Positions 205-26,113 of a DNA stretch of 29,788 nucleotides are shown here, piece after piece. Source of the DNA: Macrostomum lignano (lineage: Eukaryota); contig NIVC01001633.1 of NCBI GenBank assembly GCA_002269645.1, positions 1 through 29,788 of the forward strand, given 5' to 3'. The notes under the pieces are model-generated. The model was not told where the DNA came from, made no database searches, and was given only the letters and a program-made list of their open reading frames with translations. Position 1 is the first letter of the stretch. Each line of letters starts with the position of its first letter. The position numbers were made by a program, and so were the translations under genes.

Positions 205-595
205 ATTCTGTTAAATATCCGCCCCTCACTTAGACCATTCGCGCTCTATTTAACCATCTGCCCACTCTGTTTAACCATCCGCCCCTGTGTTTAACCATCC
301 GCCGCCCTCCCTATAATCATCCGCTCCTCTATTTAACTATCCGCCCTCTCTATTTAACCATCCGCCCACTCTGTTTAACCACCCGCCCTCTATTTAACCA
401 CCCGCCCCCTCTATTTACCATCCGCCCCCTCTATTAAACCATCCGCCCCTCTATTAAACTGTCCGCCCCTCTATTTAAACATCCGCCACACGCTATAACA
501 ATCCTTCCCTCCCTATAACAATCTGTCCCTCGATTTAAACCATCCACCCCCTTCCTTTAACCATCCGCCCCCTTAATATAACGCTCCGCCCCTTG
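205..595. repeat. Degenerate minisatellite, ~20-21 bp unit (TTTAACCATCCGCCCCTCTA-like)
   Basis: Repeated ttaaccatccgccc(c)ctctat variants read directly from the sequence; edge copies are more diverged. Confidence 0.85.
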
Positions 596-3861: not shown

Positions 3862-4421
3862 AGATTCTCGTGGATTTAAAGGAGATTCTCGTGAATTGAA
3901 GGGAGATTCTCGTGGATTGAAGGGAGATTCTCATGGATTTAAAGGAGATTCTCGTGGATTTAAAGGAGATTCTCGTGGATTGAAGGGAGATTCTCGTGGA
4001 TTGAAGGGAGACTCTCGTGGATTGAAGGGAGATTCTCGTAGATTGAAGGGAGATTCTCGTGGATTTAGGCGAGATTCTCGTGGATTTAGGCGAGATTCTC
4101 GTGGATTGAAGGGAGATTCTCGTGGATTTAGGCGAGATTCTCGTGGATTGAAGGGAGATCCTAGCGGATTGAAGGGAGATTCTCGTGGATTGAAGCGAGA
4201 TTCTGATAGATTTAAGGGAGATTCTAGTGGGTTGAAGGGAGATTATCGTGGATTGAAGGGAGATTCTCGTGGATTCAAGGGAGACTCTCGTGGATTGAAG
4301 GGAGATTCTTGTGGAGTTAAGAGAGATTCTCATGGATTTAAAGGAAGATTCTCGTGGATTTAAGCAAGATTCTGATAGATTTAAGGGATATTCTTATGGA
4401 TTTAAGGGAAGATTATCGTGG
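3862..4421. repeat. 21-bp tandem array (GGGAGATTCTCGTGGATTGAA), ~26 copies
   Basis: Direct periodicity. The unit is a multiple of 3, which produces the LKGDSRG and STRISLQ pseudo-ORFs. Confidence 0.95.
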
Positions 4422-4510
4422 ATGTATCGAAACTCTCAGAGAAAAATCCACAAGATCCTAAAACATTGCTGTTAAATGGTTGCGCACAATATAACCGCAC
4501 ACTAACAAAC

Positions 4511-6011
4511 TCAGACACAGTCTGTCAGGTCACTAGCCAAACCACAATTAGCAACCTCCTGTAGCCGCATGAGCATAGCCATCAGTCGGTCATCTGTGGT
4601 GTTGGCATCAGACGATGCTGTAATCACCTCGTCGTTGGCTGCAGTAGAATCTTTATTGACAACTTCGGCTGGGATGTCATCAGCAGCTCCGGTGACAACG
4701 GCTGGTGCGGAAACCCCTGCGGCTGGAGGTCTACTAGCTTCGTAACCCACATCCTCCGGACGGATGCTGATCAACTCCTCGGCGTCCCCGCTGGCACCCC
4801 AGGGCCAGTCAATCTTCAACTTGGCCGCCGGATCTTCCCACGGAGCTCTGGCGCCGCGCAGACGCAGGCCTTCACGGCAAGCTTCGATAACGTAGGGAAC
4901 TAAGCAGTGATTCCACAGCCGCAGGAACCACTGCTCCGCGCCGCGCCACGAGTCCATGGGGCAGGCGGCGAACTGGCCGGGGCCCAGCGACGCCTCAGCG
5001 CCAGCGTGTGTCTCCAACAGGCGATTTAACTTCAACCAGGCGTCCTGCAGCCAGTCAACTATCAGCGACATCTCGGGCAGTCTGGACCCAGCTTCAACTT
5101 CGGCAGCAACCAGACGCTGGCGCAGACACCGGCCCAGAAAGCCGCGCACCGGTTCCATATGAGCCGAGCACAGAACCCAGCGAAAATTGCAAGCGCTGTG
5201 CAGCTCAAGCTTGGCCGCGTGAAGTCGCTCAGCTTGCCCGCTGCCGCCTTGCGTCATCACGCCAACTATGAAATACGGCGGCGGTTCCTTCGGCGGCAAA
5301 CAGGCTGACAGGACCTCAGATAGCGAGTCTACCAGGTGCAAATTATCCAGCACAACTGCACCAACGCTGGAATCGTTATTCAAACTGGTGAGAAAAGTTC
5401 GAAGATTTCTTTCGCTACGCCGATCGGCGGTGAAAGTGGCCACGCTAGAGGAAGAGCCAGACAGGTGAGCTGCTAAACTACCAGCTAGTCTGGACTTGCC
5501 AACACCTGCTGGGCCGCACAGCGCAATACGCCTGTGCTCCTTCAGCAGACCGATATATCTCTGCAGTGTAGGCTTAGGCACCAGAGTCTCCAGTGCCAGG
5601 GTCTCCAACTCGCTAGCCAGATGGAGCTGTAGATAAAGTCGAAGCTGGGGATTTCTAGGATCAATATTGGGATCCGAGGAGGCGGCAGAGGCGGCCGACA
5701 TGCAAGCTACCAGAGGCGGCGGGCAAGAGTGAGATGAAGCGCCACGCCGCCTGAGACCCATGCCGCTGCTGCCGCCATTGCTCCCAAGGATTTCGTAAGC
5801 GACAACGCAGTCCGATCCCAAGCCGAGACCCTGGCTAGGATCAACTCTAGTCAAATATTCTTTAAACAGCCGACCGCAACAGGCGTCTAAAGTTTCCCAT
5901 TTTGTTCTGGGACAGACTGGCAGACAGCCAATTGGCTGCTTGCTGCTCCCAGCCAGCACAGTGAGTCGGAGACTTTCCGCTGAGCTTGGAAATCCATCGA
6001 TTAGGTCAAAT
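4511..6011 (-). CDS. unc-53/NAV: Neuron navigator / unc-53-like, last coding exon (AAA+ ATPase domain)
   Basis: LETLVPKPTLQRYIGLLKEHRRIALCGPAGVGKS (Walker A) and VVLDNLH (Walker B) match the NAV-family AAA region, as do RWVLC..HMEPVRGFL and GPGQFAACP. Acceptor tttcccccgcAG ends at 6012 on the minus strand. A phase-2 join to the upstream exon keeps the frame (AQG-FDLIDGF...TVLAGSSKQ). Stop at 4511-4513. Confidence 0.9.
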
Positions 6012-6064
6012 CTGCGGGGGAAATAGGGTGGGTAGTTACTTTGTGAAGCTTACAGTATAATGTG

Positions 6065-6300
6065 CAACACTGTCAGTGATAAGCACGTCTGACTATCACA
6101 TTACGGCCCCTGGTTCGACTCCCTGAACGGCTCTAACCCTTAAGGCACATAGAGTGTACAAGTCTAACGATTAGTAAGTCAAAGGGCCATTGTACACCTT
6201 GTATGAGCGTGTGTATGAGTGCGTGCCTGCGTACAATATTGTCGCGCTTGCATGTCCTCAGGAGTCAGCGGAAGTATTTCCCCTCATGGAAACTACCGGT
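6065..6300 (+). mobile_element. Possible tRNA-derived SINE inside the NAV intron (antisense to the host gene)
   Basis: B-box-like GGTTCGACTCC at 6112-6122, preceded by an A-box-like tgtcagtgataagc and followed by a GT-rich body. The cloverleaf is degenerate, so this is not a functional tRNA. Confidence 0.4.
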
Positions 6301-6325
6301 CTCTATACTTTAAAATCTTTCTTAC

Positions 6326-8460
6326 CCTTGAGCCCCGTTAACCACTAGGGCGGCATCGCAGCGACCATCCATTGAGCCATCGCCGACAGAGATGGCCGAC
6401 AAAGCTGCTGTCGAGTCCACGCTCAGCCGTCTGGCGCCACCGCCGAAGCCACCATAAACGTCAGTAACCGACCCGCCAAATCCGTGATCCTCGCTTACAA
6501 AATCTGATCTCATCTGTTGTAGCTGCTGTAGGCGACAATTCTCAGCCTTCAAATTGCTAATGTCTGCTCGCATTTTTTCTGTTAGACTGCGCAATTGTTG
6601 CAGCTCGGCAGCGGATTGCTGCTTTTGCTGGAGTTCGAGCTCTGTTAGTGCGGGAGGCTCAACAACAGGTGGCTGCTGTTGCTGAGGAGGAGGCTGTGCT
6701 TGTGACTGCTGCTGCTGCTGTTGTTGCTGCTTTTTTGAGCTGCGCAAACTTCTCAACCAGCCATGATGCCGTTTACTTTGCGAGCCTTGCTGCTGCGACT
6801 CCTTCTGCATCATAAGCTGCATTGGCGCTTCCTCGCGTTTCAGCGCGCCAACAGCGGCCCGGAGACGGGACAGCTCAGTGTCCTTGCGTTCAGCACTGCT
6901 AGCCAGATCTCTCAGCTTGGTGGTGACATCCGACAGAGACTGTTCAAAAGCCTCGGCAGCGTCTGTGTTGGCGCAGAGCTGACCAGCCAGACTAGCGATT
7001 CTCTGCTGGGCCTGCTCAAGCTCAGCTCGAAGCTTTGCAATCTCCATCGCTTGCCGCTCCTCATTAGCCGTAGTGGCTGACGAAGACACGGCCGAGTAGA
7101 TTGACAGCGTGGAGCCTCCGATGCCTCCGCCGCCGCCACTACCCGGGTAGAAGCTCCCAGTTGAACAGCTTGACCGCATGGTGGCGTACGGCAGTCGAAG
7201 GCTCTGACTAGGTGTTGGAGGAACAGCGGCAGACATTGGCAGAGAGGCGGGGGCTTGACCAGCTGCAGACCGAATGGTGCAGTAGCCACTGGTGCCAGCA
7301 GCCAGGCCGGTTTTGCGTCTCTGGTGCTGCTGTAGCAGCTGGTGCTGCTGCTGACGCTGTACAGACTCTGTATCGGAGAAGTAGTACTCTCCACCGCTGC
7401 CGCCGCCAGCTGAGCCCTCCTGAAGGAGTTGCTGAAGCCGACTGGATGAACGAATGGCTCCATAATCTGCCGATGCTTTACGCAAAGTGAGGCCATACAA
7501 GTCTGGAGTGGCCCGGCCCTCTCCTCCAGCGCAGACTGAGCGTTCCAGCTCAGCAACAGCGTCCGACAGTTCGCTGGAACTGATCGACATCTCGTCGGCA
7601 TTGTTTAAAGCATCATCAAGATCGCTGCAGTCGATGTGCAAGGAATTGCTGTTATCCTCGTCGGAAGCATCGCAAGTTAGAAAACTATTACTACTGCTAG
7701 TATTGTTGGAGTTCTTAACAGTAGTAGCGGAGGCAGGGGATGCCGGTGTAACAGATCTGGATGAAGCTGTCTGCCCGATTGTTGGCCTGGACAGCAATCT
7801 ACGTCCAGTGGACGCTGACGAGGATGCCGCCTGAGAATTAGTCGAAGAAGAAGACTGCGGAGTGTCGGCGGTTTCTTTGAGCTGTACGGGATTTCGCGGC
7901 CGGCGATGCAGATGGCGCTGGATGCCGCTACTGTTTGCGACAGATTTAGTCGGTTTAGGAAGCTGAGTAGACTGAACAGTTGGCTGCTTCGGTTGCGCAG
8001 GAGGCTGCTCAGATCGAGCTCGTTGATGCCGCTGCGGCTGAGGCAGCGAGCTGTGCGCAGAGGCGCCAGGCGAAGGCGTTGCTGCAACCACAGCGGCTGC
8101 TGAGCCTCGCCTGCCCTGGGGCTGAGGAATTCCCGACGAAGCGGCTGACTTGCCGCTGCTAGTTGGTATGCCAGACGATGAAGTGCCGGAAGATGCTGTT
8201 GAGTGACCGGTAGGCATAGCGTGACGACCGGATGTCAGTCTGGACGGGGCCAAAGGCGGCGCCGGGCTGGTATTTCTGCTACCTGTGTTGCTATGGCAAC
8301 GCTGCTGCTGCTGCTGCTGCCGAGAACGCAGACCGTATCGAGGAGAAAATGGCAAAGTACCTGCTGTTGCTACTGCTGATGTTGCAGAAGAAGATCTGAT
8401 GATGCGGCTGCTGCGGAGGCTGTGGTATAGCCGAGTGGGAACGATGCTTGCCACTGGCAC
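6326..8460 (-). CDS. unc-53/NAV: Neuron navigator / unc-53-like, large exon (Ser/Gln-rich region, SxIP-type motifs, coiled coils)
   Basis: 712-aa ORF containing EIAKLRAELEQAQQRIASLAGQLCANTDAAEAFEQSLSDVTTKLRDLASSAERKDTEL (the NAV coiled coil), a GWLRS motif and two SGIP motifs. Donor GG|GTAAGA at 6325 gives a 314-nt intron (6012-6325). The 5' boundary is uncertain (8290 or 8460). Confidence 0.85.
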
Positions 8461-8593
8461 CGCTGGGTATGGCAGTGGCGCTTGAGCTGCGATGCTCGCG
8501 AGTTGATGGCTTCACATATACAATGCCAAACTGATTGTATTGTTGCTGTTGCTGGGCCTGATGACCCTGCGGCGGTTTAAGGCTTCGCTGCAT
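8361..8593 (-). CDS. unc-53/NAV: Probable N-terminal coding segment of the NAV-like gene (different frame from the large exon)
   Basis: MQRSLKPPQGHQAQQQ...TAIP...SAIPQPP has the same composition and SxIP-type motifs as the large exon. It joins that exon in frame through a candidate 70-nt GT-AG intron (8291-8360), or through a frameshift. Confidence 0.5.
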
Positions 8594-10929
8594 TACTAAA
8601 TATATCTATTTCAATAGGCAGTCTAAACAGTTGTCTCTGTTGGACGATGAATCTCTTCACCCAGCAGTGCAACTTCCGTCAGAGAATAGCTCAGCGTACG
8701 AAGACTGTTGATTTAATTTCTATCTTTATCTTTAGATTGTTTATTAAAACTAAACACACGGTGCAAAGTAGAACGCCAGTTGGATAAGACATCGGCTTAG
8801 TATTAAACGTGATGCCTACCGATTCAATGCGCAGTGCACACTAACAAGTCTAGTTGCCATCAGTCTTCGGAAACGAGCAGACTTATTCAAAATTGATATT
8901 CTTAACAGCAAGCAGTCAGGCAGAGATAGACGACTGAAAGTTACAGATTGACAGTGAATTGTTAGGACTAGGAATAACTACAAATTAGATCCTAAGAAAG
9001 CGTTGCATTGCAGCTTTTTATTATTTAGCTGCTAATCTACGCTTGACAACCGACCCCACTCGCTGCTTTATAGCTATCCACTAGGCTTGGCTCCCCCCCT
9101 CCCAACCCAGCTATCTGTGCAGTTTCCGAATTGGTCGGCTTTAAAAAAGCTATTTTTAGCTAAAAGCAAAAGTATGCACGCGTACATATATATAGAAGCG
9201 ATGCTAAAAATTAAAGCATGACTATGAAGCCAGATTTAAAGGCCAGGGGACTGGCCACGGAGATCTAAAACTACCTGGAGTTATTGCACTTTTGATCATA
9301 TTCAGATAGATTTAGATTCAGATTGCTACTGTTGGTTAACCGGAATTATGAAAAACCTCGTTTTATTTTAAAGTAAAAAACGAACTTTTTATGGGCGATT
9401 TGGAGGGAAGATTTGTCAATCCAGGTTTTGGATTTAGACCTTCTTGATTTAGGCTAGGAAGGAACAAGAGGCGGCCGCCATTCCACATTCGTTTTATTTT
9501 TTTCTCTCGATGTCAAGCCCAGTTTGACCGTTCCCTTCTCTCCCGCTATGCACCAAACACTCCACCACTGTCTTACCACTGCTTGGATTGAGGATAACTT
9601 CACATCCCCTGTCTCTAAGCATCTAATATATCCCAAAAATGACCAACTGCTAGGGCCGTCATCCTTCAGGCCTTTTTTCTAACTCGCTTCTTTATCTGTC
9701 TCTGGCTTGCCAAAGACACACCTGTACTGTGCAGAACTGTTCCCTTATATCTGTGCAAAAATAACCGGGTATCAGTCCGAAATTAGTCACGAACATACTG
9801 ATTCGCACAGTTTTTTTCATTTAGGAGGAAAAATTGTCTTTTTGTATCATACCTTTTGAACGACTATAAGTAAAGTGTATAACTAAGAGCAAAGTACATT
9901 AAACCCCATATCACTACATATCTTTTAAAGTGGAAATATCAAGAAATTCTGCAGTGTTGACTAAATTACCATAACAGCAAGCTTGGAATAAAGTACAACA
10001 AATAAAGTACATCATTATAATCCTTAAAAATGATCTTTGCTGCACACAATGTTACCTGGTGCTTGGTATGATATAATTTGAAAATTAAACAATATACATT
10101 TAACATCATGAGCCTATCAGAAAAAAATACTAAAATATATGCATAACCTCTGAACTTGTAACACTGGTTATGCTACTAGGTTTTGATTGAAAATGCAACT
10201 TAGTTTTGTAACTTATCCAAAAGCAAAGGATGAGGTTTAGCTACTCATAAAATATTGTTTAGAAAGTTGTCTATTTTGCCACTTACATTTGGCCTACCAC
10301 AGTTTACACTGGCCAAATCAGCTGTGTTAGACAGCAATTGCACAGGTAGTGCAAATAACAACTATCAAGTAAACATTAAACATATTAATAGGAAATTAAA
10401 ATTACAATTGCTTGCATGTAAGCCCTCCACCTCCCTTGTGTGCTCTCTTGCATCAATTCTCTACCCTTTTTTACATGCTGATTGGCTCTGCCATGGCATT
10501 CTGGCTAAGGCAATGCATTTGATTTGCACTCCACTCTCTCCCAGTCTGTTGTCACCTTAGAGTTGTATTTTTTCATCCTTGCATCTATACCAGGGTATAG
10601 CTAACATAACTAACATAAATAAACTAGAACAGTCATAGTAGACATCTAGCCTATGGCTTGAAAGTGAGTAAGATATCTGAGCAATGATAGCAATGATCCT
10701 CAAGTTCAGTAATACCCACATAAATGTGCAAGTTCTTTGGGGTCTGGAGTCGGCATTCTATTACCCAGGCCTGTGCCTTCACCATGACCCTAGTTACTAA
10801 CTTTCAGTCTATGTGTGCAACATGCCTCAGGATTGGTAAGTAGCAAGACTGGAGTGTTGACCCTCCCTGCTTATACTGAGCATGATGTTAGACCACCTGG
10901 TCTGTCTGTTAAAATTGTCTGTCTGTATG

Positions 10930-11200
10930 TTTGTTAAAATTGGGGCTATTGGAGCAAATCTAAAATATATACATAGCCTTTAAAGTAGACATATAGACAC
11001 ATCTTTGATTTCAAGCAGAAAGCTATATTTATGTCCCTACCTCAAGTATGCTGCACTTATATGGATGACTCTTATCTGCAACTTGAATTGGCAATGTCTG
11101 CAGGTAGATAAGAACAATGTCATTTGAACTATTATTGGCAATATATCCATTGCTTTGGAGGTCAACCTCTATTATCATGAGATTTGGCTACTCAATAAAA
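10930..11200 (+). pseudogene. Decayed non-LTR retrotransposon (LINE) RT C-terminal fragment
   Basis: The frame from 11020 reads KLYLCPYLKYAALIW...QVDKNNVI*TI. This is the LINE motif LY.RPHLEYAAP.W...QV.QN..IR.I altered by transitions (CGT>TGT, CAC>TAC, GAG>AAG, CCT>CTT, CGA>TGA, all inferred). Confidence 0.55.
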
Positions 11201-11520
11201 ATAGCATTGTATTATAATCTATGTGTATTATAAAATAGCATTGTATATCTATTTATTGTCAATCTCCCTATGTTGCCTCAAGGACATTGTCTTTACTATA
11301 TATTGTCAAAATCCACACCTTGGCTCATTAACACAACCTGGCCCAATACACATATGTTGAACTACTCAACAAAGTTGTTGGAGTTCAACTAGACATCAAT
11401 GAGTACAAAACTAAGCTCCCTAGGAGCATGCACACTCAGCTTGCTTAGCTGAAGCATACATGCCCAACCTCAAAATTTCACCCATCCAGTGCAACTTAGT
11501 TTTGTCACAAATATTTTTTC

Positions 11521-12594
11521 ACTATTCTGAATAATGAAGAAACAAAGCAGAGTGTCATTTGGTTTTTGTGCAAGCAAGGGAAATGGCAAGCAGAAATTAT
11601 TTATGAGGTACAAGCAACATATGGTAAAAGTGAACAATCAAAAATCACAGTTAACAAATGGGTGCAGTGCTTTGAAGATGGCTAGGAGATGGTTTATGGC
11701 CTTTTGCAGAGCAGCTAGCCTGCCACCATGGTCAATATGAGCTTGTGTATTATGCTCTAGATGTTGAGTCAAGCCATAGTGCAAGAGTTGTCAACTAGTA
11801 CTGGCATCTCATCAATGGCTATTCACTTAATCTTGACAGTTGCACTTGGTATATAACATGTCTTTGCTTATTGGGTCCCAAAACTTCTGACTGACTAGCA
11901 ATAGCAAGAGCAGGTCTAGGTGTGTCAGTAGCTTCTCTAGTCATATTGTAGTGATCCCAAATTTTTGGGCTAGATTGTGACTAGGGATGAATCTTGGTTC
12001 TATTATAGTGAGCCAGGGTCCAAAATGCAGAGCAATGTGTAGAAGAAGGCCAGCCATGAGCCCACACCTATCAAGACCCTAACTGCACCTTTAGCTTAGA
12101 AGCAAATGGCCACTATCTTCTAGGACAAGAAGGGCATTCTGCTTATCAAATAGCATCCCTATGGTGCCAAAATCAATAGTGAATAATATATCTAAGTCTT
12201 GCAGAAGTTGCATGAAGCCATCAAGGCCCAATGATATGGCAAGCTAAGTTGTGGCATCTTGCTTTAGCATGACAATGTCTGCTACAATCGTGGCTATTTT
12301 GGAACTGGGCTTCCAGATGTTGCCACATAAAAGAAGATAAAAGATAAAAAGATAAAAAACATACCTGAGATTGCTAGTAATGCTTTCTACAGACCCTGGC
12401 ATCAGCCATGGTCAAGGGGTTACCTGCTAATTTCTATGCTGCCAGTATAAAGAAGTTGGCTAAGAGGTGACATAAGTGCATAAGTCTCAAAAGTGCCTGC
12501 CCATGTTGAGAAGCAGGAAGAGTAACATTACATTTGTTTAATCCATTAATCTGTTAGACATGTTTGATTGTAGACTTTTCAAACAACACTTGTA
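11521..12594 (+). mobile_element. Hypermutated mariner transposon relic
   Basis: One frame (11521-12288) gives TVNKWVQCF, AYWVPKLLT, IVTRDESWFYY, IF*DKKGILL, INSE*Y and LL*HDN. Later pieces read AILELGFQMLPH and FYAASIKKLAKR*HKCI...HVEK. A right TIR remnant (reverse complement TACAAGTGTTGTTTGAAAAGTC) ends at TA 12593-12594. The left TIR was not found. Confidence 0.9.
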
Positions 12595-13299
12595 CATTTG
12601 GTTTGAGTACCCTAGCCAATTTAGTCTATTTAACCATGGCCAAAAAGAACATCCTCTAGTTTCTAAGATGTTTTTTGTCTAAGATATTAGAAAAATATAA
12701 CTTGCAATAGCACCTCGGCTCTAATAATATAATAATATGAGAAATAAACATTGGGGCAAAGCTCAACTATTTGATTTTCTTTAGGTTTCCTAATTGTATA
12801 ATCAAAACCCAAGGCCAAGTATTCATTTAGACCAGAGTTCACCATCTTGTCCCCAAATGATTATGCAGAGCTAATCTTGTGTCTGGGCTCTGACTTTTTG
12901 GACATTACCTATCTGACAAATGAGTAAGAACAATCTATAGGCCTAATAGTCATATGCTTCAATGTTGTCTTGTCCACTTTGAACAATAAGTCTAATGGAT
13001 ATTATAAATGAGTAAGCTGCCATGTCCATCTGTCTATTCTAATCTATCTGTCTGCCTACCTACCCTAGGTGCTCAGTGAACTACCAGAATAGTACCATAG
13101 TAGAGCAATTTTGCCTGCCCTTGAAAGCAAAACCACAGAGTCCATTGGAATGACTAAAAGACTAAGCATTGTGGCTAATGATTTCAAAAAGTTCTGTGTT
13201 AATCTTGAATTGCCCCTATAACTCTTTAGAAGAATTTCCCCCAAATTGTAGAATAGCCCCTAGAATTTTTTAGAAGAATAGTAGGGATACTTATATTAG

Positions 13300-13420
13300 A
13301 GATCTTTAATAGAGACTCCTTGCTATCTGTGGAATGCTTGCTATCTAGGAGAAGATATTTGCTATTATGGGATGCTTGCTATTGGGAGATACTTGCTATC
13401 TTTAGGATACTTCCTATTCG
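13300..13420. repeat. Short decayed tandem repeat (~20 bp, ggat(g/a)cttgctat core)
   Basis: About five imperfect copies of atgcttgctat / atacttgctat / atatttgctat. Confidence 0.55.
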
Positions 13421-14094
13421 GAAAAGGTGCTTTTGGTCTTAATGTTTTCTATTTAAGGAGAATGCCTATTGTCTTTGTGAAGGCTTTATTTTATTGTCCT
13501 TTTATTTCTTGCATAAAAATAAATTCATAGCAAACATCTTTGTAACAATTTTACTTGAATAAAGTGATTTGCATTTTTTGGAAAATAACAAGGTCTATTT
13601 TTAGAGTTTAAACTTATCATATATATATTAAACTATCTAATTTTTTATAGGCCTAAAATTAAAAAAATGCAACAAAAAGACAATTGCAAACAAATGTATT
13701 CTTATAAATTGATTTGCCATGACTATCTAAATATGTATATTGATTTTTTTTCAATTTTCATAGTAGCCAAATTACTAATGAGCCTAAAAAGCAAAGTATC
13801 CTCTTTTTACCCTATGTCACCTATGTTATATATCACCTATCCATTTGTTTGCCTTGGTAAGCAGGACCAATCATATATCAGTAAGACTAATATATTTATA
13901 TACATTTATTTATACACTACAAAGCCAATTTCTCTATTGGAGAAGAAAAGGGATAGAACTCTATTTCTAGAATTCCATTCCTTAAAATATATTAGCTAAA
14001 TCCTATGACCCAAATTCCATCTTCTAAATCCTTTGCAACACTTCTATAAAATCTAAAATACCATATCTTGTTTTCCCTGTTTGTAAAAACTGAC

Positions 14095-14490
14095 TGTCAT
14101 TGTCTAGACTTGGACTTTCTCCTGTATTTTGTTTTATCTTTACTTTTTTATCTCTGACTCTTATCTATTATCTCTTTTTTTCCTCTTTCTTTTTTATTAT
14201 TTTATCTCTTTTCTCTCTTCTCTCTTTTTTTATCTCTTTTTTCCTCTCTGCACTCTCATTTCTACTCTTCTTTCCTTTCTATTTTTTGCTTTTTTTGCTT
14301 TTATCTTTTCTTCTATCTTTTTGTTCTGTGTTCTCTTATTTCTTTTCTCTCTCTTATCTCTCCTTTTTTCTTTTTATCTATTTTATTTCTCATTTCTTAT
14401 TTGTAATCTAACATTTCTTATTTATTCTATCTTTACTTCTTTTCTTCTCATTTGTATCATTTGTATTCTCTATATTTCTCCTTTCTTATA
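14095..14490. repeat. Pyrimidine-rich (CT/T) low-complexity tract
   Basis: Near-pure T/C sequence; it explains the F/L/S-rich pseudo-ORFs at 14100 and 14129. Confidence 0.85.
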
Positions 14491-15000
14491 TTTTCTCTGC
14501 ATAGGGCTCTACCACTATTGTTACAATACAGATCATACTCAAACTGCTAGCCTGGGAAGTCATCAAATATAATAAATTAGGTTTGGTTAGGAAGCAATAA
14601 AACCTACCAGAAAGAAAGAATAAGGCAAAAAAATGATAAGTGTCCAAGCTTGATATACTTCAATATAATTGGTAAATTTTTTTCATTCTACATAAAAAAT
14701 AAAACTGTTATAAATAAACTTTTACAGACAATATTATTATTTAATAGAATTTTAATTGCAAAAAGTACTAACTGCTTTTAACTTAAATGTAAAAATGATA
14801 ACATGGAAAATCAAAAGCATATAATAACAAAATAATGGAATTAAAAAGTTTAAAAAAATGGCTAGGAAAATTTTCTTTTATATTTTATGCATTAGCAGAA
14901 CTTGACAAAACTTTCTAATACTAGATTGATTCTAATTTCATGACATAGAAAAATTATTTTTCAAATACTAATAAAACTAACATTAACTGTACTAAAAATA

Positions 15001-16760
15001 CAAGGATTTTCCATAAGTACTTATACTTTTGCATGCTGCTCAGGAACTACGCAACCAATCATTGTAAGTTTTATGTCGCTGGAAAGCGGCTTTACTCATC
15101 TTTAATCTGTCGCCAAAATCATTTCGTTCTGTCAACTATGTCAAAAGTTACAACAAAAAACGTAGTCAAAGGTCACCCATAGACTTACAAGAAATTTTCA
15201 AAATCAAAACTTCAAAGTTCAGCACGCAGAGTTATTTCGGATTCTACATAATGCATTCTTTTTTGCTTCATAAGCGAATGCCACACCCTTTTCATCTATG
15301 GAAAATACTGGCCTAAGCTTTCACAGCATCTTAATCTTAAGATCACAGCATCTTAATCTTGTAAAGTTTCACCACCTTGGCTGCTGCTGCATCACCATGG
15401 ATGTGAACTCAAGGGAAGGACAGCGCGCTGCAATTTTTACCCTCTGGAAACTCGGAAAAAAGCGATCAGAGATTTATGCGGATTTATGCAACATTCATGG
15501 AGCTAATGCGGTGAGCAGGATGACCGTCTACAACTGGGTTGAGCAGTTCGAAGCAGGAAGGACCAATGTTGCTGATTTGCCGAGGTCGGGCCGCCCCTGC
15601 ACATCAGGCTCTGATGCTCTCACCGATCGAATTCTTGATCTGCTGGACGAAGATTGTCGGCTAACGATTCGACAGATTGCAGATAGACTGGACACGCCGA
15701 GCACAACTGTGCATCGCTGCTTGTCGCGCATGGACTTTGTCAAGCTGACTGCTCGTTGGGTGCCACGCCTACTCACCTCGGACTTGAGACTGCAGAGGCA
15801 GCAGATTTGTCAGGCCAATATTCGGATGATGGAAGAATACGGTGGTTGGGATCTCTTCCATCGAATGATAGTCACTGGAGATGAAACCTGGATTCCCCAT
15901 TTTGATCCACCAACGAAACGTGATTCCCAGGTCTGGATGCTGAAGGGCTCTGATCCTCCGGTAAAAGCTCAAAGGGACGCACATGGAAAGAAGATCATGC
16001 TGTCTCTGTTTTTCGACTGCAATGGTCCTCTAACTGTCGAGTTTTTGGAGCCAAACACTACAATAAACTCTGAGCGCTACGTTGAAACGCTAACAAAGCT
16101 GCATCATGACATCCAGAACAAGCGTCGTGAAAATCCCAGACCTTTCATTCTTCATCATGACAATGCAAGGCCTCATACAGCACAAAAGACAGTCGAGGCA
16201 ATCAGCAAGCTGAAGCTCCATCTTCTACCTCACCCTCCTTACTCTCCAGACCTGGCACCAGCAGACTTTGCTTTATTTCCAGAGTTGAAGCGCCATCTGA
16301 AAGGACGCGTGTACGAGACCAGGAACCAGATCGAGGAGGAAGTCCGCAGAATTCTGCTGTATGTCATCCCCCGACAGCTGTACGCAGAAGCCATCAAAAG
16401 CATGTTTAAAGTTTAACAGGTGGACCAAGTGCATCAACTCCGGTGGAAACTACGTTGAGAAGGTGTCGGTACCGACTGAGGATGAGTGACAAAGAAGTCA
16501 AACTTTCTGTCATCAACAACGCGCCTCTGTTTTCATGCTTGCCATTGTAGTTGTTGCTCTTTAAATTTCTTGTAAGTCTATGGGTGACCTTTGACTACGT
16601 TTTTTGTTGTAACTTTTGACATAGTTGACAGAACGAAATGATTTTGGCGACAGATTAAAGATGAGTAAAGCCGCTTTCCAGCGACATAAAACTTACAATG
16701 ATTGGTTGCATAGTTCCTGAGCAGCATGCAAAAGTATAAGTACTTATGGAACATCCCTCG
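15001..16760 (+). mobile_element. Full-length mariner (DD34D) transposon with ~197-bp TIRs and TA target duplication
   Basis: TA at 14999-15000 and 16761-16762. 15001-15197 is the near-perfect reverse complement of 16563-16760. A transposase ORF lies inside. Confidence 0.95.
15397..16489 (+). pseudogene. Mariner transposase, frameshifted near the C-terminus
   Basis: Probable start at ACCATGG 15397 (MDVNSREGQRAAIF). Motifs present: RSGRP, ARWVPRLLT, IVTGDETW, HDNARPH and YSPDLAPADF, with 34 residues between the 2nd and 3rd catalytic D. The ORF stops at 16416. The expected tail RWTKCINSGGNYVEK continues in the +1 frame (16418-16489). Confidence 0.92.
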
Positions 16761-16817
16761 TAATTGAGTTATATGCATTAGAAAATAAACATTATCATTT
16801 GTTCAATACATTAACAT

Positions 16818-17230
16818 TAGAGGTCAAGTGGGATCCCCATCCAATCTCAAAATCTTAGGATCCTAAGAAAAATTGGATTTCCATGGGACCAGAATCTCAA
16901 CCCTAAAAAACATGAGAAGCAGGAATAGGTCTTTTGATTAAAAAGTTATAGAATTAGTAATTGCTTGACTTGAATATATTTTGTTTTACATTGTACTCAT
17001 TACATTATTACTTTGTTGGTTACAAAACTTTGCATTAATTTTGTTGTTTTTTACTTTTTGATCTTGACATTTTTTGTTCAATTTTGTTTTTACTTTATAT
17101 GGACCTTTTAGCTACAATACACTAAAAGACCTGATCCTAATTCCCAAATCCCAATCCTAATCCCAATCCAGGAAAAACGTTATTCCCAATCTTGATCCTG
17201 CTTGAAGATTTCAATCCTGTCTAGCCTCCA
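16818..17230. mobile_element. Decayed MITE-like element (possibly hAT-type) with ~17-bp TIRs and ATCCCG-like subterminal repeats
   Basis: The left end TAGAGGTCAAGTGGGAT and the reverse complement of the right end TGGAGGCTAGACAGGAT differ at 7 sites, all transitions. Clustered atccca/atccta/atcctg hexamers lie near the ends. No TSD is evident. Confidence 0.5.
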
Positions 17231-17981
17231 TTTTGGTAAATGATAATGTAAATGATGATAATTAAATGATACCATTTTAGAAGGGTGCTAGTAAACTTGT
17301 CAATTTTTTTCCTCAATTGGCTTTGCTGTGTAATAAATTTGTCAACTGGTAAATTCCTCAGCATAGTACACATGCACAGTATATGCAGCTAGTCTCAGTG
17401 TACAAATAAAACAGATTCATAAAAACAATGAACTGAGCCATGTCATTGTAATGCTGGTTTTTAGGCATAGGCCAGATAAGCAAATCATCTATCATTGGAA
17501 TATGTTTTTGCTAGATTGACTGGATAAGAGACATGCAACAGCGCATTGTAGCACCTAGTAGTCTGCCATATATAATATGATCAAATATGAGATATGATCA
17601 AATTAAAAACAATAAAACCAAGAATCTTCTATTTCAACAACTAGTAGCTAGGGGACCATATTTCTACATCTCTTTTGTTTGCATCACTTATTTCTGTATA
17701 CTTTGTTATACTGCATATTAGTTATACATTATACAAACTGAGGTAAACTCATTAACACAATTGACAAATAAAAAGTTGACAAGTTCACTCAGATCCTTTT
17801 AGAATAGGCCTAATATTCTATTTTGGAATATTATTAATACACTTTATCATGTTTAATACTAATAGGCCTAATCATTCAAATATTGCTAGGCTTAAAAAAA
17901 CTTTTAAAATCTTATTAGAATGCTAGACAGCCTAGTCATATCATTGATTTAATGATGGGAGACATTTTCAATATAAAAAAC

Positions 17982-18726
17982 AGAAGTGCTTATCCCCACG
18001 GTCCCATGTCAATAATTCTAATTTTATCTACACGGATCCATGTCAATAATTTCTAGCTTATTCCCATGGCAGCTTATTGAAATAGTTGCCACTATTCAAG
18101 TCTTATAGGCCATGTCAATAATTCCAATTTTATCACATGGATCCGTGTCAATAATTTTCAGCTTATCCCCATAGCTAGATTGTGCAGTTGTTTGTGTTAA
18201 GTTTTGTGTACTGACATTAAATTGATATTGTCATTATTATCAATATTATTATTATTAGGCCTATTATTACATTTTGAATTTTAAATTTTGCAAGTCTCAT
18301 TTGCCTTACTCAATAGAGTATGTAATTTGGTCATTCTAAGCAAAGCTGGCAGCTAAGCAAATATTTAAAATTAACCCTTTAGTTTTAGTGCAGAAAAAGT
18401 TTTAACAAAGTACTTAATACTATTCAATATTCAGTATTTTATTTAAAAGATTTGTAAAACTATGAAAACAAATAGACAGTTTTATTCATTTTAAGGTTCT
18501 TTATTCCAATAGGCCCTAAGCTGTCGTGGGGATAAGCTGAAAATTATCAACATGGATCTGTGTGAATAAAATTGGAATTATTGACAAGGCCTATAAGACT
18601 TTAATCAGTTGAATGGTGACAACTATTTCAATAAGCTGCTGTGGGGATAAGCTAGAAATTATTGACATGGATCTGTGTGGATAAAATTAGAATTATTGGC
18701 AGGGGACTGTGGGGATAAGCACTTCC
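17982..18726. mobile_element. Non-autonomous foldback/MITE with ~190-205-bp inverted arms containing internal subrepeats
   Basis: 17982-~18171 aligns with the reverse complement of ~18520-18726. Flanks taaaaaac / aaaaaaac may be an 8-bp TSD with one mismatch. The AT-rich spacer is non-coding. Confidence 0.85.
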
Positions 18727-20965
18727 AAAAAAACAATCTAGTATTGGTCTCATGTTTGAAGAAAATTGTTTTTTAAAGCTATTTTTTCTGAAATCTATTA
18801 TATACCTACCTACCTACCTAACCACATTAAGACAACTTATTTTTAGTATTATGGATAAAATATAAGTGGCCTATGGCCTATGCCACCTATGCCGCACATC
18901 TAGCTGCAGCCTACAGCTGCAGGGCACAGAGCTCAGTATTAATTAGGAACAAACAAATTTGGCAACAGAAATTTAACACGGACTAATTCGGCGAAAGCAA
19001 ATTCGGCAACACGTCTTTTTATAGCTAAAGACAAAAGTTAAAGCGAACTACGCACCTTTTTTGGTAGACACGAAAATATCCTGATAATCGATATCTCGAC
19101 ATTTTTTTGATAGAAACAGAGAAGAAACTTTAAAAAAAGTGGTTCATTTCCTAATAAATGTTTAATCATAGGATATAAAAAACCAACTAAACAAATTAAA
19201 AGAAGGTGTAAGAAATTCTAAGAAACATAAAAAACGTTTTAATAAATACAGAAAATTGTTTGACTTTTCGTTTCAAAGAACATAAAAATTTAAGTTGCTC
19301 ATGGTGCGGCGGTGAGCGCATGCAAGCTAACCAGGCTAATTCATCATAGTCTAAATCGGGCAAAAAGCACTATTTTATAGGTAGCTAACTACGTTTCTTC
19401 TTGTTACTGATTAAAATTTCAAACCATAGAAACTTTTGAAATTTCAAGCCCACTTTACAACTTATATCATAAATATAATATTATAACTTTGACTTTTTGT
19501 TTCTCAACCTGTCCGCTGTCTGTGTGTCTGGACTTTGGCTGCTAGCTGCGCAGTAAAAAATGGCTCTTTCTAACACATTGTTACAAAATATAAAACTTCT
19601 ACAGACTAATGAAATGTACGAGGATATCAAAATTGTGGTAAGTAAAGACATTTAAATATAATATCTATGTAATATTATGATTCATTATGGTAGATCTAGA
19701 CTGACTGACTAGTGACTAGGCCCCTAGCCTAGATCTGAAGGCATAATTAAATTGTCTTATTTTGAATTGATAAAGCTAAGTAAATACTTGATTCCTGTAT
19801 TGTGATTTAATCAATTACAATGATTAGCTCTAAAATAATGGCGAAATAAAAAACATTGGATTAAATGATAAAACAAATATGTGTACTGTAGCTTCTGTAC
19901 TGTACTGTACTGTAAATATGTGGACTTCTTCAAGTTTATGTTGATAAAATACTTCCGATTTTTCGATTTTTCTGAAACTTGCGGTGGAGACTTATGGGGG
20001 ATCCAAAATTACATAAATGCAAAAAAAGTGTAGAAAGTTACCTGTATGGTTGATGCAATGATGATTTACTTGATTCCCTATTCTCTTAATAAGGTTCAGT
20101 GAGAAAAAGTTTTACAAATACATTTTTGAAAGTGTATCCACTTGACTTTTTATTTTATGGCACATATGCTAGAACTTCATTAGGCCAATTAAAGATGAAT
20201 ACTAATATCTACAAATGGCAATCCTACACTTCCGTTTGGTAAATTATTTTGACACTGAATTTTGAACAGGCGTGTTAAATAACAATGTAACCAAACAAAA
20301 CTGAAACAGTGGAACATGGTAGCAGTCTGTTAGAGTGCATAGTCACTTAGAGTGTGTCTGCAGGTCATTAAGGTGTCTATAATGGATAGTAATGTCCAAT
20401 CCAGTACAGGATAGCCCCAAATGGACATTGGGGATATAGACAATGCCAGAGGAATTCCTCAATGTGTGCATTGAAGAGAGCATCGCTCGTGCTATGCATG
20501 TTGCAGATCTTGCACTTTGCGTGGGCCTATGTGCCCTCCACGGTGTTGGTGTGGACTATTGGGTCTGCTGGATCTACGAAGTGCAGCCGATGGGAAATGA
20601 GAAATTGAAGCTCAAAAAACAAGCAGCTCACAAGCAACAGCTCCCTTAAACTGACACCCCCTTAAACTCTGTTCGCTCAAACTTTTGGCCATAGACACAT
20701 TGCCAATTGACGTCATTTGACTCGGTGGTACGAATTCAAATGTTAAAATAATTTACCGAACGGAAGTGTAGGATTGCCCTACAAATTAATATGCAAATGT
20801 TTTTTATGTTTGGATTATAGTTTTTCAATTTAGTTATAATGCATAGACAGTGCCACGTCACTGTGTGCTTTTTTTTAAAAACTGCCATGTCACAACTTGC
20901 ACTTTCACTGCACCCAGCCAAAGCAATGTTCAAAACTCGCACTTGTATTTAAGGCAGTAACAGCA

Positions 20966-21751
20966 GGCTCATTCCATATAAGATGGACATATTTGGAAAA
21001 TAGAAAAAAGTCAATATTTTTGCTTGCCATTGCCTAATTAGCCTATTTTTTTACCAAATGTTTATATTGTGCAATATATACAATCTAAGAATAAAGGAAT
21101 GGTAAAATGTTGGATTAGTATGTTATCAATTGGCAAAAAGTCATTTTTGTAAAAATTTGGACATTTTTCGAAGCAAAAGACATCATTAAGATTTTGTACC
21201 TTTTAAAAACAAATAGAAAGCTTTTGAAGGTTGAAACAAACTATAGATAAAAGTATAGTACTTGCATCATCAGATAAAAGCATTGGTGACCAAATAATCT
21301 ATTATATTTTTAATGTATTAGTACCTCAAAGTTACTGAATTGACAGAAAAAAATATGTTACGACCATAATGCTACGACCATAAGGCTGCCTTTTCTTTTG
21401 TATCTTTGTTGCCTTTTGAGTTTATATATTCTAATAAAAGAGTATGATTTCTAAAGATGTTCTTAGTCAAATTTTAAAAATGTATTGCAAAATATCAAAA
21501 ATGAAAAATGTTATAAGACTTTTACCTTTTAGTTTCTATATGTCAAAAATCCTGTCGTTATGACCATAAGTGTCATTTAAGGTTTAATAGCATCTATACT
21601 AATGATGATATCTATATGAAACTCTATAAATATATTCTAGACAAAATAATCTTTCATTTAAAATATTGGTTTAGTATATTCTATTATTAGATTTCATTTT
21701 ATAAGTAAAAATAACCTGTCATGTTACGACCATGCTTATATGGAATGAGCC
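20966..21751. mobile_element. Non-autonomous DNA transposon candidate, 17-bp TIR GGCTCATTCCATATAAG
   Basis: Perfect inverted repeat at 20966-20982 and 21735-21751. AGCA lies directly outside both ends (candidate 4-bp TSD). The AT-rich interior has repeated (t)acgaccat motifs. Confidence 0.65.
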
Positions 21752-23893: not shown

Positions 23894-24256
23894 CTTGGCC
23901 CCATTGTGACCATCGCCGAGAACAATGAGCGGCTTTTGTCTCACTCTGACCGGCTGACCTTCTATGTACACCTTGGCGATGCCTGTCACAGGACTGGCGA
24001 GCATCAGAAAGCGCTGCGCTATCTGGGCCAAGCTCTGCAACTTCGTCGGTGCACTTCTAGACTGCGCGGCCTGCCAACCGAAGCGGATATCCGGTGGCGA
24101 TCCTACCTGTGCTATGCTGCTCAGCGGCTTCATGCTGAGGCCTGCAGGGAGCTGGCCTGCGTCCCAGAGAAAGCCAGGACGCCTGCAATGCATCTGGCGC
24201 TTGGACAGAGCTATCTGAGATCTGGCGAGGAGAAACTTGCACAGACTGCTTTCAAG
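23894..24256 (+). CDS. ANAPC7: Anaphase-promoting complex subunit 7, first recognisable exon
   Basis: TIAENNERLLSHSDRLTFYVHLGDA, LPTEADIRWRSYLCY and VPEKARTPAMHLALGQSY parallel the APC7 N-terminus as I recall it (TMSNNN.., LPSEIEVKYKMAECY, RQRTPKINMML). Donor AAG|GTGATT at 24257. The 5' boundary and start codon are unresolved. Confidence 0.75.
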
Positions 24257-24299
24257 GTGATTTAAGATGGCATCGGTTATACATTTTTTTAATTAAGAG

Positions 24300-24435
24300 A
24301 GGTTGAAGATTCGAACACGGAATGTCTTTTTGAAGATTCGAACTCGGGATCTCACTTAAAAGATTCGAACTCGGGATGTCTTTTTGAAGATTCGAACTCA
24401 GGATCTCACTTTGAAGATTCAAACTCGTGATCTCT
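24300..24435. repeat. ~27-bp tandem repeat (gaagattcgaactcgggat...), 5 copies, ANAPC7 intron 1
   Basis: Alternating variants read directly from the sequence. Confidence 0.8.
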
Positions 24436-24542
24436 TCAAAATAAATAAAACTCGGATGATCTCAGAAACTCAAAGTTACACTTTTTAAAATGTCATTAAA
24501 AAATTCAAGCCTGAAATCTCTTTCCAAATTCGAAACCCGCAG

Positions 24543-24992: not shown

Positions 24993-24993
24993 G

Positions 24994-25002
24994 TGAGAGA
25001 GG

Positions 25003-25076
<74 letters not shown>

Positions 25077-25083
25077 GATAGAG
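24994..25083. repeat. (GA)n microsatellite at the start of ANAPC7 intron 2
   Basis: Direct (GA)n run that begins within the splice donor GTGAGAG. Confidence 0.95.
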
Positions 25084-25995: not shown

Positions 25996-26113
25996 GTACA
26001 GTGTATTGTTATGCATATTCTAACGTGTTAAGACCTCTATCGGACTAAGACTTCAAAGCTTTCGATTTTCAATCGCCGATATGTAGCATAAATAGTTTTA
26101 ATATATCTTTCAG

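What the first reader, a model, noticed from the sequence alone, without database searches (positions are those of the whole stretch)
11521..12594. Mariner relic destroyed by directional C>T/G>A hypermutation without frameshifts: a RIP-like signature in an animal genome
Seen: one unbroken frame of 256 codons (11521-12288) still spells a mariner transposase. It contains 18 in-frame stops (14 TAG, 3 TAA, 1 TGA) and no CpG. Inferred from conserved mariner motifs: Trp TGG>TAG at 12040 and 12121 (IFWD), Gln CAG>TAG at 12265 (LLQHDN), and Gly GGG>AGG at 11983 (VTGDESW). Arg codons appear to be hit twice: CGG>TAG at 11716 (SGRP) and CGT>TAT at 11869 (ARWVP). Known: simple 5mCpG deamination gives TG or CA. 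Reaching TA needs a second CpA>TpA step, which is the hallmark context of fungal repeat-induced point mutation (RIP). Many stops with no indels suggests a burst of targeted transitions rather than great age. CTAG is visibly frequent, so a CAG/CTG preference is possible. I know of no established RIP-like system in metazoans. An alternative is germline methylation of TEs at both CpG and CpA (DNMT3-type non-CpG activity).
Basis: partly seen in the sequence, partly recalled or inferred. Interest (0 to 1): 0.85.

Follow-up and report, generated by a model that had tools for sequence, protein, structure and literature searches.

The report
Old mariner relic eroded by methylation decay
This is an old, dead mariner transposon in a flatworm genome (almost certainly Macrostomum lignano), sitting in a 5-kb stretch that has lost nearly all its CpG sites; the damage fits slow DNA-methylation-driven C-to-T decay of transposon-rich DNA rather than a fungal-style RIP burst, though an extra C-to-T excess at non-CpG (CAG/CTG) sites deserves a methylome test.

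Summary
Window 11521-12288 is a mariner transposase frame with 18 stops (14 TAG, 3 TAA, 1 TGA) and no CpG. Of 215 substitutions, 150 are C>T or G>A, in equal numbers on both strands.

"No frameshifts / burst" does not hold. The copy carries 7 indels, including 10-nt and 2-nt deletions that cancel, plus a ~370-bp 5' deletion. It also has 4% transversions.

The family forms a graded series, from 48 of 59 CpGs intact down to 0. TpA products appear only late. They occur at the same rate at former CpGs as at ordinary CpA/TpG sites.

The CpG void is not confined to the repeat. It spans 9862-15049 (4 CpGs, o/e 0.03), while the adjacent gene keeps o/e 0.83. Classical RIP indices are negative. The genome has DNMT1-, DNMT3- and UHRF1-like genes, and no RID-like or APOBEC-like hit.

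Best reading: CpG methylation of transposon-rich domains followed by deamination, acting on an old copy.

One signal is left over. Non-CpG C>T (CAG > CTG > other CH >> CC) is 6-15 times T>C per site in copies that diverged in place, and it is enriched in elements relative to their flanks.

The parts
11500..12592 (+). Relic mariner element. It is 5'-truncated: the 5' inverted repeat and about 170 bp of element are missing. It is about 75% identical to roughly 40 other genomic copies.
   Evidence: Pfam Transposase_1 hit. The start lies in the microhomology junction 11497-11506. The left-flank homology with the orthologous locus on C3374 ends at 11506.
11521..12288 (+). Homology frame of the transposase: 256 codons, 18 stops, no CpG.
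11738..11767 (+). Segment read out of the ancestral register, lying between a 10-nt and a 2-nt deletion that together restore the frame.
12560..12594 (+). Decayed 3' inverted terminal repeat ending at 12592, followed by the TA target-site dinucleotide (12593-12594).
   Evidence: All full-length copies share sequence up to this point and diverge after TA.
9862..15049 (.). CpG-void domain containing the relic. It holds 4 CpGs in 5188 bp (o/e 0.027) at GC 0.34, with TpG and CpA in excess.
   Evidence: Only parts of it match other repeats.
15004..16756 (+). Young mariner inserted in the CpG-void domain and forming its right border. It has 221-nt terminal inverted repeats (15004-15224 and 16536-16756) and an intact 372-aa ORF at 15298-16416. 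CpG o/e is 0.77.
16760..18892 (.). Continuation of the CpG-poor domain beyond the young insertion (9 CpGs in 2.1 kb).
4511..8460 (-). Exons of a neuron-navigator-like AAA+ gene, used as the local CpG-normal comparator (CpG o/e 0.83). The CpG-normal sequence continues to 9861.

Best explanation
The feature is an old, immobile mariner copy lying inside a transposon-rich intergenic domain. I infer that this domain is CpG-methylated in the germline/stem-cell lineage of the flatworm.

Step 1. DNMT3-type de novo methylation and DNMT1/UHRF1 maintenance keep such domains methylated. Genes and their upstream regions are left unmethylated.

Step 2. Spontaneous deamination of 5-methylcytosine converts CpG to TpG or CpA on either strand. 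This runs roughly 30-100 times faster than other substitutions, so every CpG is eventually lost.

Step 3. A slower, AT-biased C>T process at non-CpG sites then turns some TpG/CpA into TpA. Its order of preference is CAG > CTG and CAT > other CH >> CC. This creates TAG/TAA stops and CTAG.

Step 4. Ordinary transversions and indels accumulate in parallel, at the rate expected for an old copy.

What is shown: the spectrum, the graded family series, the in-place accumulation after segmental duplication, the domain-wide CpG void, and the presence of the methylation genes.

What is inferred: that the domain is actually methylated, that deamination is the cause, and that the non-CpG excess reflects low-level CpH methylation by DNMT3. 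I put about 0.4 on that last point alone.
For: Spectrum in the relic:
- 150 of 215 substitutions are C>T or G>A, symmetric between strands (78 and 72) and spread evenly along the element.
- C>T rate per cytosine by context: CpG 0.60, CpA 0.23, CpT 0.15, CpC 0.14. A/T transitions are 0.041 and transversions 0.042.
- All 56 consensus CpGs are gone: TG 20, CA 18, TA 13, other 5.

Family series:
- Intact CpGs out of 59 run 48, 37, 35, 32, 29, 26, 20, 19, 14, 13, 3, 0. TA products appear only in the most decayed copies.

Changes accumulated in place:
- In paralogous locus pairs that share flanks, changes since duplication are CG>T 47, CA>T 39, CT>T 17, CC>T 11, T>C 8, transversions 17.
- In the same pairs the ts:tv ratio is 122:20 in elements and 163:121 in flanks (p=1e-9).

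Domain level:
- 9862-15049 has CpG o/e 0.027, while the adjacent gene has 0.83 and the young mariner 0.77.
- 21% of 140 sampled 500-bp windows have o/e below 0.1, next to a broad mode at 0.6-1.2.

Gene toolkit:
- DNMT1-like (BAH domain plus PCQ and ENV motifs), DNMT3-like (best PDB match DNMT3A, 4.5e-19) and SRA/UHRF1-like genes are present.

Literature:
- Macrostomum lignano retains DNMT1 and DNMT3 and has low global 5mC (PMC11292947, PMC10658182). Low global 5mC is what one would expect if the methylated domains have already lost their CpGs.
Against: - No methylation data were available for this locus, so the methylated state is inferred only from its mutational footprint.
- The spectrum rests on one transposon family and a majority consensus of 11 distinct copies. 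The relic belongs to an old lineage of that family, so some differences may be lineage differences rather than mutations in place.
- Polarised recent changes among the assembly copies of this locus show no C>T excess in the CpG-void block (C>T 8, T>C 7, transversions 19). The numbers are small and may include assembly errors.
- Flank transversions may be inflated by misalignment in AT-rich DNA. That would exaggerate the contrast between elements and flanks.
- A CpG:other rate ratio of about 80-100 is higher than the vertebrate figure I recall (roughly 15-30).
Confidence: 0.72

Rival explanations
1. RIP-like process. A duplication-sensing machinery mutates repeated DNA in bursts of C>T with a CpA preference, killing copies soon after they arise.
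For: - Strong C>T/G>A bias, many TAG/TAA stops, and 13 CpG>TpA double hits.
- Among non-CpG contexts the order CpA > CpT > CpC is the same as in Neurospora RIP (from memory).
- C>T is enriched in elements relative to flanks in the same locus pairs.
Against: - CpG, not CpA, is the dominant target.
- TpA/ApT is 0.85 and (CpA+TpG)/(ApC+GpT) rose to 1.73, so the classical indices are negative.
- The decay series is graded rather than all-or-none.
- Double hits are no commoner at former CpGs than at ordinary CpA/TpG.
- Flanks without a detected repeat match are equally CpG-void.
- In this redundant neopolyploid assembly genes also occur in 3-4 copies, yet they keep their CpGs.
- A young mariner family with 100 or more copies at 98-100% identity is undamaged.
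- The PF00145 search found only DNMT1, DNMT2 and DNMT3 groups.
Confidence: 0.04
2. Ordinary age only. A genome-wide neutral process (universal CpG decay plus AT drift) acts equally everywhere, and the relic is simply very old. No targeting of transposon-rich domains is involved.
For: - The copy is old: 4.2% transversions, 4.1% A/T transitions, 7 indels and a large 5' deletion.
- No ongoing C>T excess is seen in recent changes at this locus.
Against: - CpG loss is sharply regional: o/e 0.03 beside 0.83.
- Copies with only 0.1-0.6% transversions have already lost 9-42% of their CpG cytosines.
- Element and flank spectra differ over the same time span.
- Non-CpG C>T against T>C is 67:8, where about 1.7:1 is expected from an equilibrium process (p=4e-7).
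Confidence: 0.08
3. CpG methylation explains the CpG loss, but the non-CpG C>T excess is only a general AT-biased mutation pressure acting on a GC-rich newcomer (50% GC in a 33% GC neighbourhood). On this view there is no CpH methylation and no targeted deamination.
For: - Elements are far from the compositional equilibrium of their surroundings.
- In the old relic the C>T:T>C per-site ratio falls to about 4.
- Recent changes in the CpG-void block are balanced.
Against: - In young copies the per-site ratio is 6-15 for changes made in place and 9 by unique columns.
- The context dependence is strong: CAG 49%, CTG 35%, CCN 11%; CWG against other CA/CT gives p=3e-4.
- The ts:tv ratio in elements is 4.5 times that in flanks.
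Confidence: 0.35
4. Editing by an AID/APOBEC-like DNA deaminase acting on transposon DNA.
For: - Directional C>T.
- AID/APOBEC-like deaminases exist in several invertebrate phyla (from memory).
Against: - The changes are strand-symmetric (78 and 72; 115 and 108) and not clustered.
- The decisive context is the 3' neighbour (G, then A/T), not a 5' T, C or WR. The 5' effect is only about 2-fold.
- Mariner has no single-stranded cDNA stage (established knowledge).
- There were no hits to APOBEC_N or NAD1. This is a weak test, because the search works exon by exon and the NAD1 control was uninformative.
Confidence: 0.03

Closest known systems
CpG decay of methylated transposons in vertebrates (for example Alu and L1), and CpG depletion of repeats in some invertebrates (cnidarian survey, PMC8857923)
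   Same: The conversion is strand-symmetric CpG>TpG/CpA and accumulates gradually with copy age. It depends on the DNMT1/DNMT3 toolkit. CpG o/e serves as a footprint of germline methylation.
   Different: Here the void is far deeper: o/e 0.02-0.05 against about 0.2 in vertebrates. It is mosaic, with sharp borders. It spares the one gene body examined, which is the opposite of the usual invertebrate gene-body pattern. It also comes with a marked non-CpG (CWG) C>T excess.
Fungal repeat-induced point mutation (Neurospora RIP; RID-dependent)
   Same: Repeats are inactivated by C>T/G>A transitions that create many stops. Among non-CpG sites the order is CpA > CpT > CpC.
   Different: The dominant target here is CpG. 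RIP indices are negative. The process is graded, not a burst. It is not limited to duplicated DNA. No RID-like gene was found.
CpG/TCG hypermutation of transposons in basidiomycete fungi (Microbotryum and rust fungi; recalled from memory, not checked here)
   Same: Transposon-directed C>T centred on CpG, attributed to methylation followed by deamination rather than to classical RIP.
   Different: A different kingdom and different enzymes. No 5' T preference was seen here: TCG 34/38 against ACG 28/28.
DNMT3-dependent non-CpG methylation (mCAG/mCAC) in mammalian embryonic stem cells, oocytes and prospermatogonia, and plant CHG methylation by CMT3 (both from memory)
   Same: The context hierarchy of the non-CpG C>T excess matches these methylation preferences: CA > CT >> CC, CAG/CTG favoured, CCG low.
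   Different: Only a mutational footprint is available, with no methylation measurement. No chromomethylase-like gene appeared in the PF00145 search.

Membership tests
Tc1/mariner DNA transposon | DDE/D transposase of the mariner type | tested here: met
   Pfam Transposase_1 at E=3.7e-8 on the stop-masked frame. The relic is 74-79% identical in DNA to about 40 genomic copies.
Tc1/mariner DNA transposon | Terminal inverted repeats and a TA target-site duplication | tested here: inconclusive
   The 3' repeat and TA are present at 12560-12594. The 5' repeat is deleted in the window copy but present in the orthologous copy on C3374.
Fungal RIP | C>T/G>A transitions dominate the divergence of repeats | tested here: met
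   150 of 215 substitutions.
Fungal RIP | CpA>TpA preference. Indices: TpA/ApT above 0.89 and (CpA+TpG)/(ApC+GpT) below 1.03. | tested here: not met
   CpG 0.60 against CpA 0.23. The indices are 0.85 and 1.73.
Fungal RIP | Acts on duplicated DNA only, ending at the repeat borders | tested here: not met
   The CpG void spans 9862-15049, well beyond the 1.1-kb element. Triplicated genes and a family of 100 or more young copies are spared.
Fungal RIP | Burst-like: many transitions with few other changes, all-or-none among copies | tested here: not met
   Continuous series from 48 of 59 CpGs intact down to 0. The relic has 4% transversions and 7 indels.
Fungal RIP | RID/Masc1-type cytosine methyltransferase homologue | tested here: not met
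   PF00145 hits resolve into DNMT1-, DNMT2- and DNMT3-like groups only. The search works exon by exon, so a divergent gene could be missed.
5mC-deamination decay of methylated repeats | Strand-symmetric CpG>TpG/CpA, far faster than other changes and progressive with age | tested here: met
5mC-deamination decay of methylated repeats | Maintenance and de novo methylation machinery encoded in the genome | tested here: met
   DNMT1-like, DNMT3-like and SRA (UHRF1-like) genes. PMC11292947 and PMC9246332 report the same for M. lignano.
5mC-deamination decay of methylated repeats | The locus is methylated in the germline | not testable with these tools
AID/APOBEC editing | Strand-asymmetric, clustered C>T with a 5'-neighbour motif, and a deaminase gene present | tested here: not met
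   The changes are symmetric and evenly spread. The 3' neighbour is decisive. There were no PF08210 or PF18778 hits; gene absence is only weakly tested.

The most novel reading that the evidence does not exclude
Macrostomum lignano subjects transposon copies to a DNMT-dependent cytosine mutagenesis that extends beyond CpG to CAG/CTG and other CpA/CpT sites. The cause would be either substantial non-CpG methylation or enzyme-promoted deamination on targeted (perhaps piRNA-guided) elements. This would amount to an animal counterpart of methylation-linked repeat mutagenesis. It would act in place, preferentially within elements rather than their flanks, and would leave gene bodies unmethylated.
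Probability: 0.25. Interest if true: 0.75.

Novelty: new member of a known kind. Interest (0 to 1): 0.42.

Why it matters
[quoted passage not shown] M. lignano is one of the few flatworms that keep DNMT1 and DNMT3.

The mutational footprint here predicts a specific pattern. Methylation should be concentrated on transposon-rich intergenic domains, which are now almost emptied of CpG. The one gene and upstream region examined should be spared. That is the opposite of the usual invertebrate gene-body pattern, and it would explain why measured global 5mC is low.

The footprint also makes a concrete, testable prediction: methylation at non-CpG CAG/CTG sites on young transposon copies.

For genome annotation, the result shows that stop-riddled but frame-preserving transposon relics in this genome need no exotic mechanism.

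Tried and rejected
1. Identifying the organism from proteins. The best homologues of the navigator-like exon are only about 40% identical, and the exact-protein look-up found nothing. Identity was inferred instead from assembly statistics: 764,410,778 bp in 5269 contigs, against 764,424,962 bp in 5270 scaffolds for Mlig_3_7.

2. Transposon-specific hypermutation since the homeologue split. At first sight the relic is 85% identical to its orthologue while the flanks are 97-98% identical. This was rejected. The 11-14% divergence block (11501-13000) extends into non-mariner DNA, contains about 40% transversions, and fits a deep haplotype block in a mosaic of 0-4% elsewhere.

3. Majority polarisation in triplets of paralogous loci. 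It proved unreliable because two members are sisters. It was replaced by polarisation against the family consensus.

4. Random genomic sample and a second transposon family (the young mariner). No other family had enough copies in the sequence already held.

5. Node-by-node ancestral states on a family tree.

6. The primary M. lignano genome paper, which reports the bisulfite data, is not in the held library.

7. The CpG-free stretch at 25129-26024 is merely a 28-bp minisatellite whose unit lacks CpG.

Full report
**Observation.**
- The first 256 codons (11521-12288) contain 14 TAG, 3 TAA and 1 TGA, and no CpG.
- With stops masked, the frame hits Pfam Transposase_1 (mariner) at E=3.7e-8.
- The frame is recognisable only by homology. 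The other five frames carry 9-21 stops over the same span.
- A search of the window's own genome found about 40 related copies at 74-79% identity. It also found three further copies of the whole locus.

**Organism.**
- The genome has 764,410,778 bp in 5269 contigs.
- The Macrostomum lignano DV1 assembly Mlig_3_7 has 764,424,962 bp in 5270 scaffolds (PMC5730564). The two differ by one scaffold of 14,184 bp.
- That assembly is known to be highly redundant, because the species is a neopolyploid and the DV1 line carries extra large chromosomes.
- Consistent with this, the locus occurs four times: the window on C1633, C2465 at 99.5%, C896 at 98.8%, and C3374.
- The methyltransferase genes occur in threes.
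- I therefore treat the animal as M. lignano. This is an inference from assembly statistics, not a direct identification.

**Anatomy of the relic.**
- Alignment to 18 full-length relatives shows that the family element is about 1.3 kb long. It has terminal inverted repeats and a TA target site.
- The window copy runs from about 11500 to 12592, with TA at 12593-12594. It lacks the first ~170 bp of the element.
- The copy on C3374 is orthologous. It shares a 17-nt deletion, a 9-nt deletion, a 4-nt insertion and 128 substitutions with the window copy. It still has the 5' inverted repeat.
- The window's 5' truncation is therefore a later deletion of about 370 bp, at a short microhomology.
- Against the family consensus the window copy has five deletions (10, 2, 17, 28 and 9 nt) and two insertions (3 and 4 nt).
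- The 10-nt and 2-nt deletions lie 30 nt apart and sum to 12. That is the only reason a single frame can be read from 11521 to 12288. The 17-nt deletion is where that frame ends.
- 'No frameshifts' is therefore incorrect.

**Mutation spectrum of the relic.**
- I used a majority consensus of 11 distinct copies, with CpG restored where at least two copies keep it.
- Against it the relic shows 854 identities and 215 substitutions: C>T 78, G>A 72, T>C 10, A>G 10, and 45 transversions.

| Context | C>T per cytosine |
|---|---|
| CpG | 68/113 = 0.60 |
| CpA | 0.23 |
| CpT | 0.15 |
| CpC | 0.14 |
| A/T transitions | 0.041 |
| Transversions | 0.042 |

- Within non-CpG contexts CAG (0.36) and CAT (0.31) stand out. 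CWG against other CH gives p=0.0015.
- Of 56 consensus CpGs none survives: 20 became TG, 18 CA, 13 TA and 5 something else.
- The TA share of converted CpGs (13/51 = 25%) does not differ from the rate at which ordinary consensus CA/TG became TA (37/182 = 20%; p=0.44).
- The 'second hit' therefore needs no mechanism beyond the general CpA>TpA rate in this DNA.
- The changes are strand-symmetric and spread evenly along the element.
- The classical RIP indices are negative. TpA/ApT is 0.85. (CpA+TpG)/(ApC+GpT) is 1.73, up from 1.38 in the consensus, because CpG decay feeds TpG and CpA.

**The family shows a gradual process.**
- Intact CpGs out of 59 in different copies run 48, 37, 35, 32, 29, 26, 20, 19, 14, 13, 3 and 0. 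TA products are absent from the least decayed copies and appear only late.
- Copies with only 0.1-0.6% transversions and 0.2-0.8% A/T transitions have already lost 9-42% of their CpG cytosines. They also carry 1-5.5% non-CpG C>T.
- Counting each alignment column once among the younger copies gives the fractions below.

| Context or class | Columns hit by C>T, or changed |
|---|---|
| CG | 88% |
| CA | 32% (CAG 49%) |
| CT | 27% (CTG 35%) |
| CC | 11% |
| A/T transitions | 2.8% |
| Transversions | 2.5-4.5% |

- The relic is the end point of this series, not an outlier.

**The process acts in place.**
- Nine pairs of paralogous loci share flanks, so they arose by segmental or whole-genome duplication after insertion.
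- Polarising their differences with the consensus gives CG>T 47, CA>T 39, CT>T 17, CC>T 11, T>C 8 and transversions 17.
- In the same pairs, transitions to transversions are 122:20 inside the elements and 163:121 in the flanks (p=1e-9).
- Non-CpG C>T against T>C is 67:8. About 1.7:1 would be expected if the flank process at equilibrium also applied to the GC-richer element (p=4e-7).
- Caveats: flank transversions may be inflated by alignment problems in AT-rich DNA, and only one family could be analysed.

**The CpG void is a domain, not a repeat.**
- CpG positions show a block from 9862 to 15049 with only four CpGs: o/e 0.027 at GC 0.34, with TpG and CpA in excess.
- On the left, the CpG-normal sequence (9861 and below) is the ~1.4 kb lying upstream of a navigator-like gene, whose exons have o/e 0.83.
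- On the right, the block ends at a young mariner (15004-16756). It has 221-nt inverted repeats, an intact 372-aa ORF and o/e 0.77. It has at least 100 genomic matches at 98-100% identity.
- CpG-poor sequence resumes after that insertion.
- Only parts of the block match other repeats.
- Flanks of other mariner copies range from o/e 0.02 to 1.0.
- In 140 sampled 500-bp windows, 21% lie below 0.1, next to a broad mode at 0.6-1.2. This sample is small and biased towards transposon neighbourhoods.

**Enzymes.**
- PF00145 hits fall into three groups, each present in three assembly copies.
  - A DNMT1-like gene, with a BAH-domain exon matching DNMT1 structures and a catalytic exon carrying the PCQ and ENV motifs.
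  - A DNMT2-like gene.
  - A DNMT3-like gene, whose best structural match is DNMT3A at 4.5e-19.
- Two SRA-domain (UHRF1-like) genes are present.
- No additional RID-like methyltransferase appeared. APOBEC_N and NAD1 gave no hits. The deaminase searches are weak evidence of absence.
- Reviews state that M. lignano keeps DNMT1 and DNMT3 and has low global 5mC (PMC11292947, PMC10658182). A 2022 review says the genomic pattern is unknown in free-living flatworms (PMC9246332).

**Interpretation.**
- The best-supported account is methylation of transposon-rich domains followed by 5mC deamination, acting for a long time on an old copy.
- The relic's stops are mostly TAG because CAG, TGG and CGG codons feed TAG through C>T and G>A. 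CTAG accumulates by the same route.
- RIP in the strict sense fails four of its five defining features tested here.
- One thing remains unexplained by simple CpG decay: the size and CAG/CTG bias of the non-CpG C>T excess in young copies, and its enrichment in elements over flanks.
It could also partly reflect AT-biased mutation acting on a GC-rich insert.
- Recent polarised changes at this already CpG-void locus show no C>T excess (8 against 7). If real, this suggests that the non-CpG excess accompanies the CpG-rich, presumably actively targeted, phase of a copy's life.

**Limits.**
- Further genome sequence could not be fetched. A second family, a random genomic sample and genome-wide statistics are therefore missing.
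- The primary paper with the bisulfite data is not in the held library.
- Statements about vertebrate rate ratios, basidiomycete hypermutation, mammalian mCH motifs and plant CHG methylation come from memory.

Noticed in passing
window 15004-16756: A young mariner-type element with unusually long terminal inverted repeats (221 nt, 94% complementary) and an intact 372-aa transposase ORF (15298-16416; Pfam Transposase_1, HTH_48). The genome holds 100 or more matches at 98-100% identity, so the family looks recently active.
   Followed up: partly
genome hits listed (for example C264:277941-279269, C202:329405-330735): At least 14 loci carry an internally deleted derivative of the young mariner: query positions 1-528 are joined directly to 914-1723. 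A non-autonomous deletion copy appears to have been amplified.
   Followed up: no
window 6860-25134 against contigs C3374, C896 and C2465: The locus exists in four assembly copies. Divergence is mosaic: 0-0.4% over most of the length, 3-4% at 9501-10500 and 13001-14000, and 11-14% at 11501-13000. This looks like a patchwork of coalescence times or gene conversion between subgenomes or haplotypes.
   Followed up: partly
C3374, about 30572-32021 (held as L043/L044): The orthologous locus carries an extra ~1.4 kb next to the relic, containing 16 CpGs. This is probably a younger insertion absent from the window. It was not characterised.
   Followed up: no
C4239:25997-34951 (L004-L006): Three copies of the mariner family sit exactly 3,911 bp apart and are 99.7-99.9% identical, flanks included. 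The transposon has been captured in a long-period tandem array.
   Followed up: no
window 217-571, 1759-2606, 3862-4423, 25085-25989, 26452-27623, 27929-28819: Six minisatellite arrays with 20-35-bp units and 17-42 copies lie in one 30-kb window. Arrays whose unit contains CpG (for example 26452-27623) keep it, unlike the neighbouring CpG-void DNA. The array at 3862-4423 lies just beyond the 3' end of the navigator-like ORF at 4511.
   Followed up: partly
L034, L037, L040 (DNMT2- and DNMT3-like loci): Long tandem repeats lie immediately beside the catalytic exons of the methyltransferase genes. They give spurious open frames of 200-450 aa.
   Followed up: no
window 6322-8460 (-): A 712-aa open frame upstream of the AAA+ exon has no Pfam match. 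Only about 100 residues (6817-7110) resemble the N-terminus of fish navigator-like proteins.
   Followed up: no
window 20960-21752: A 97% match to the left flank of an unrelated mariner locus (L020). This indicates another repeat family in the window.
   Followed up: no
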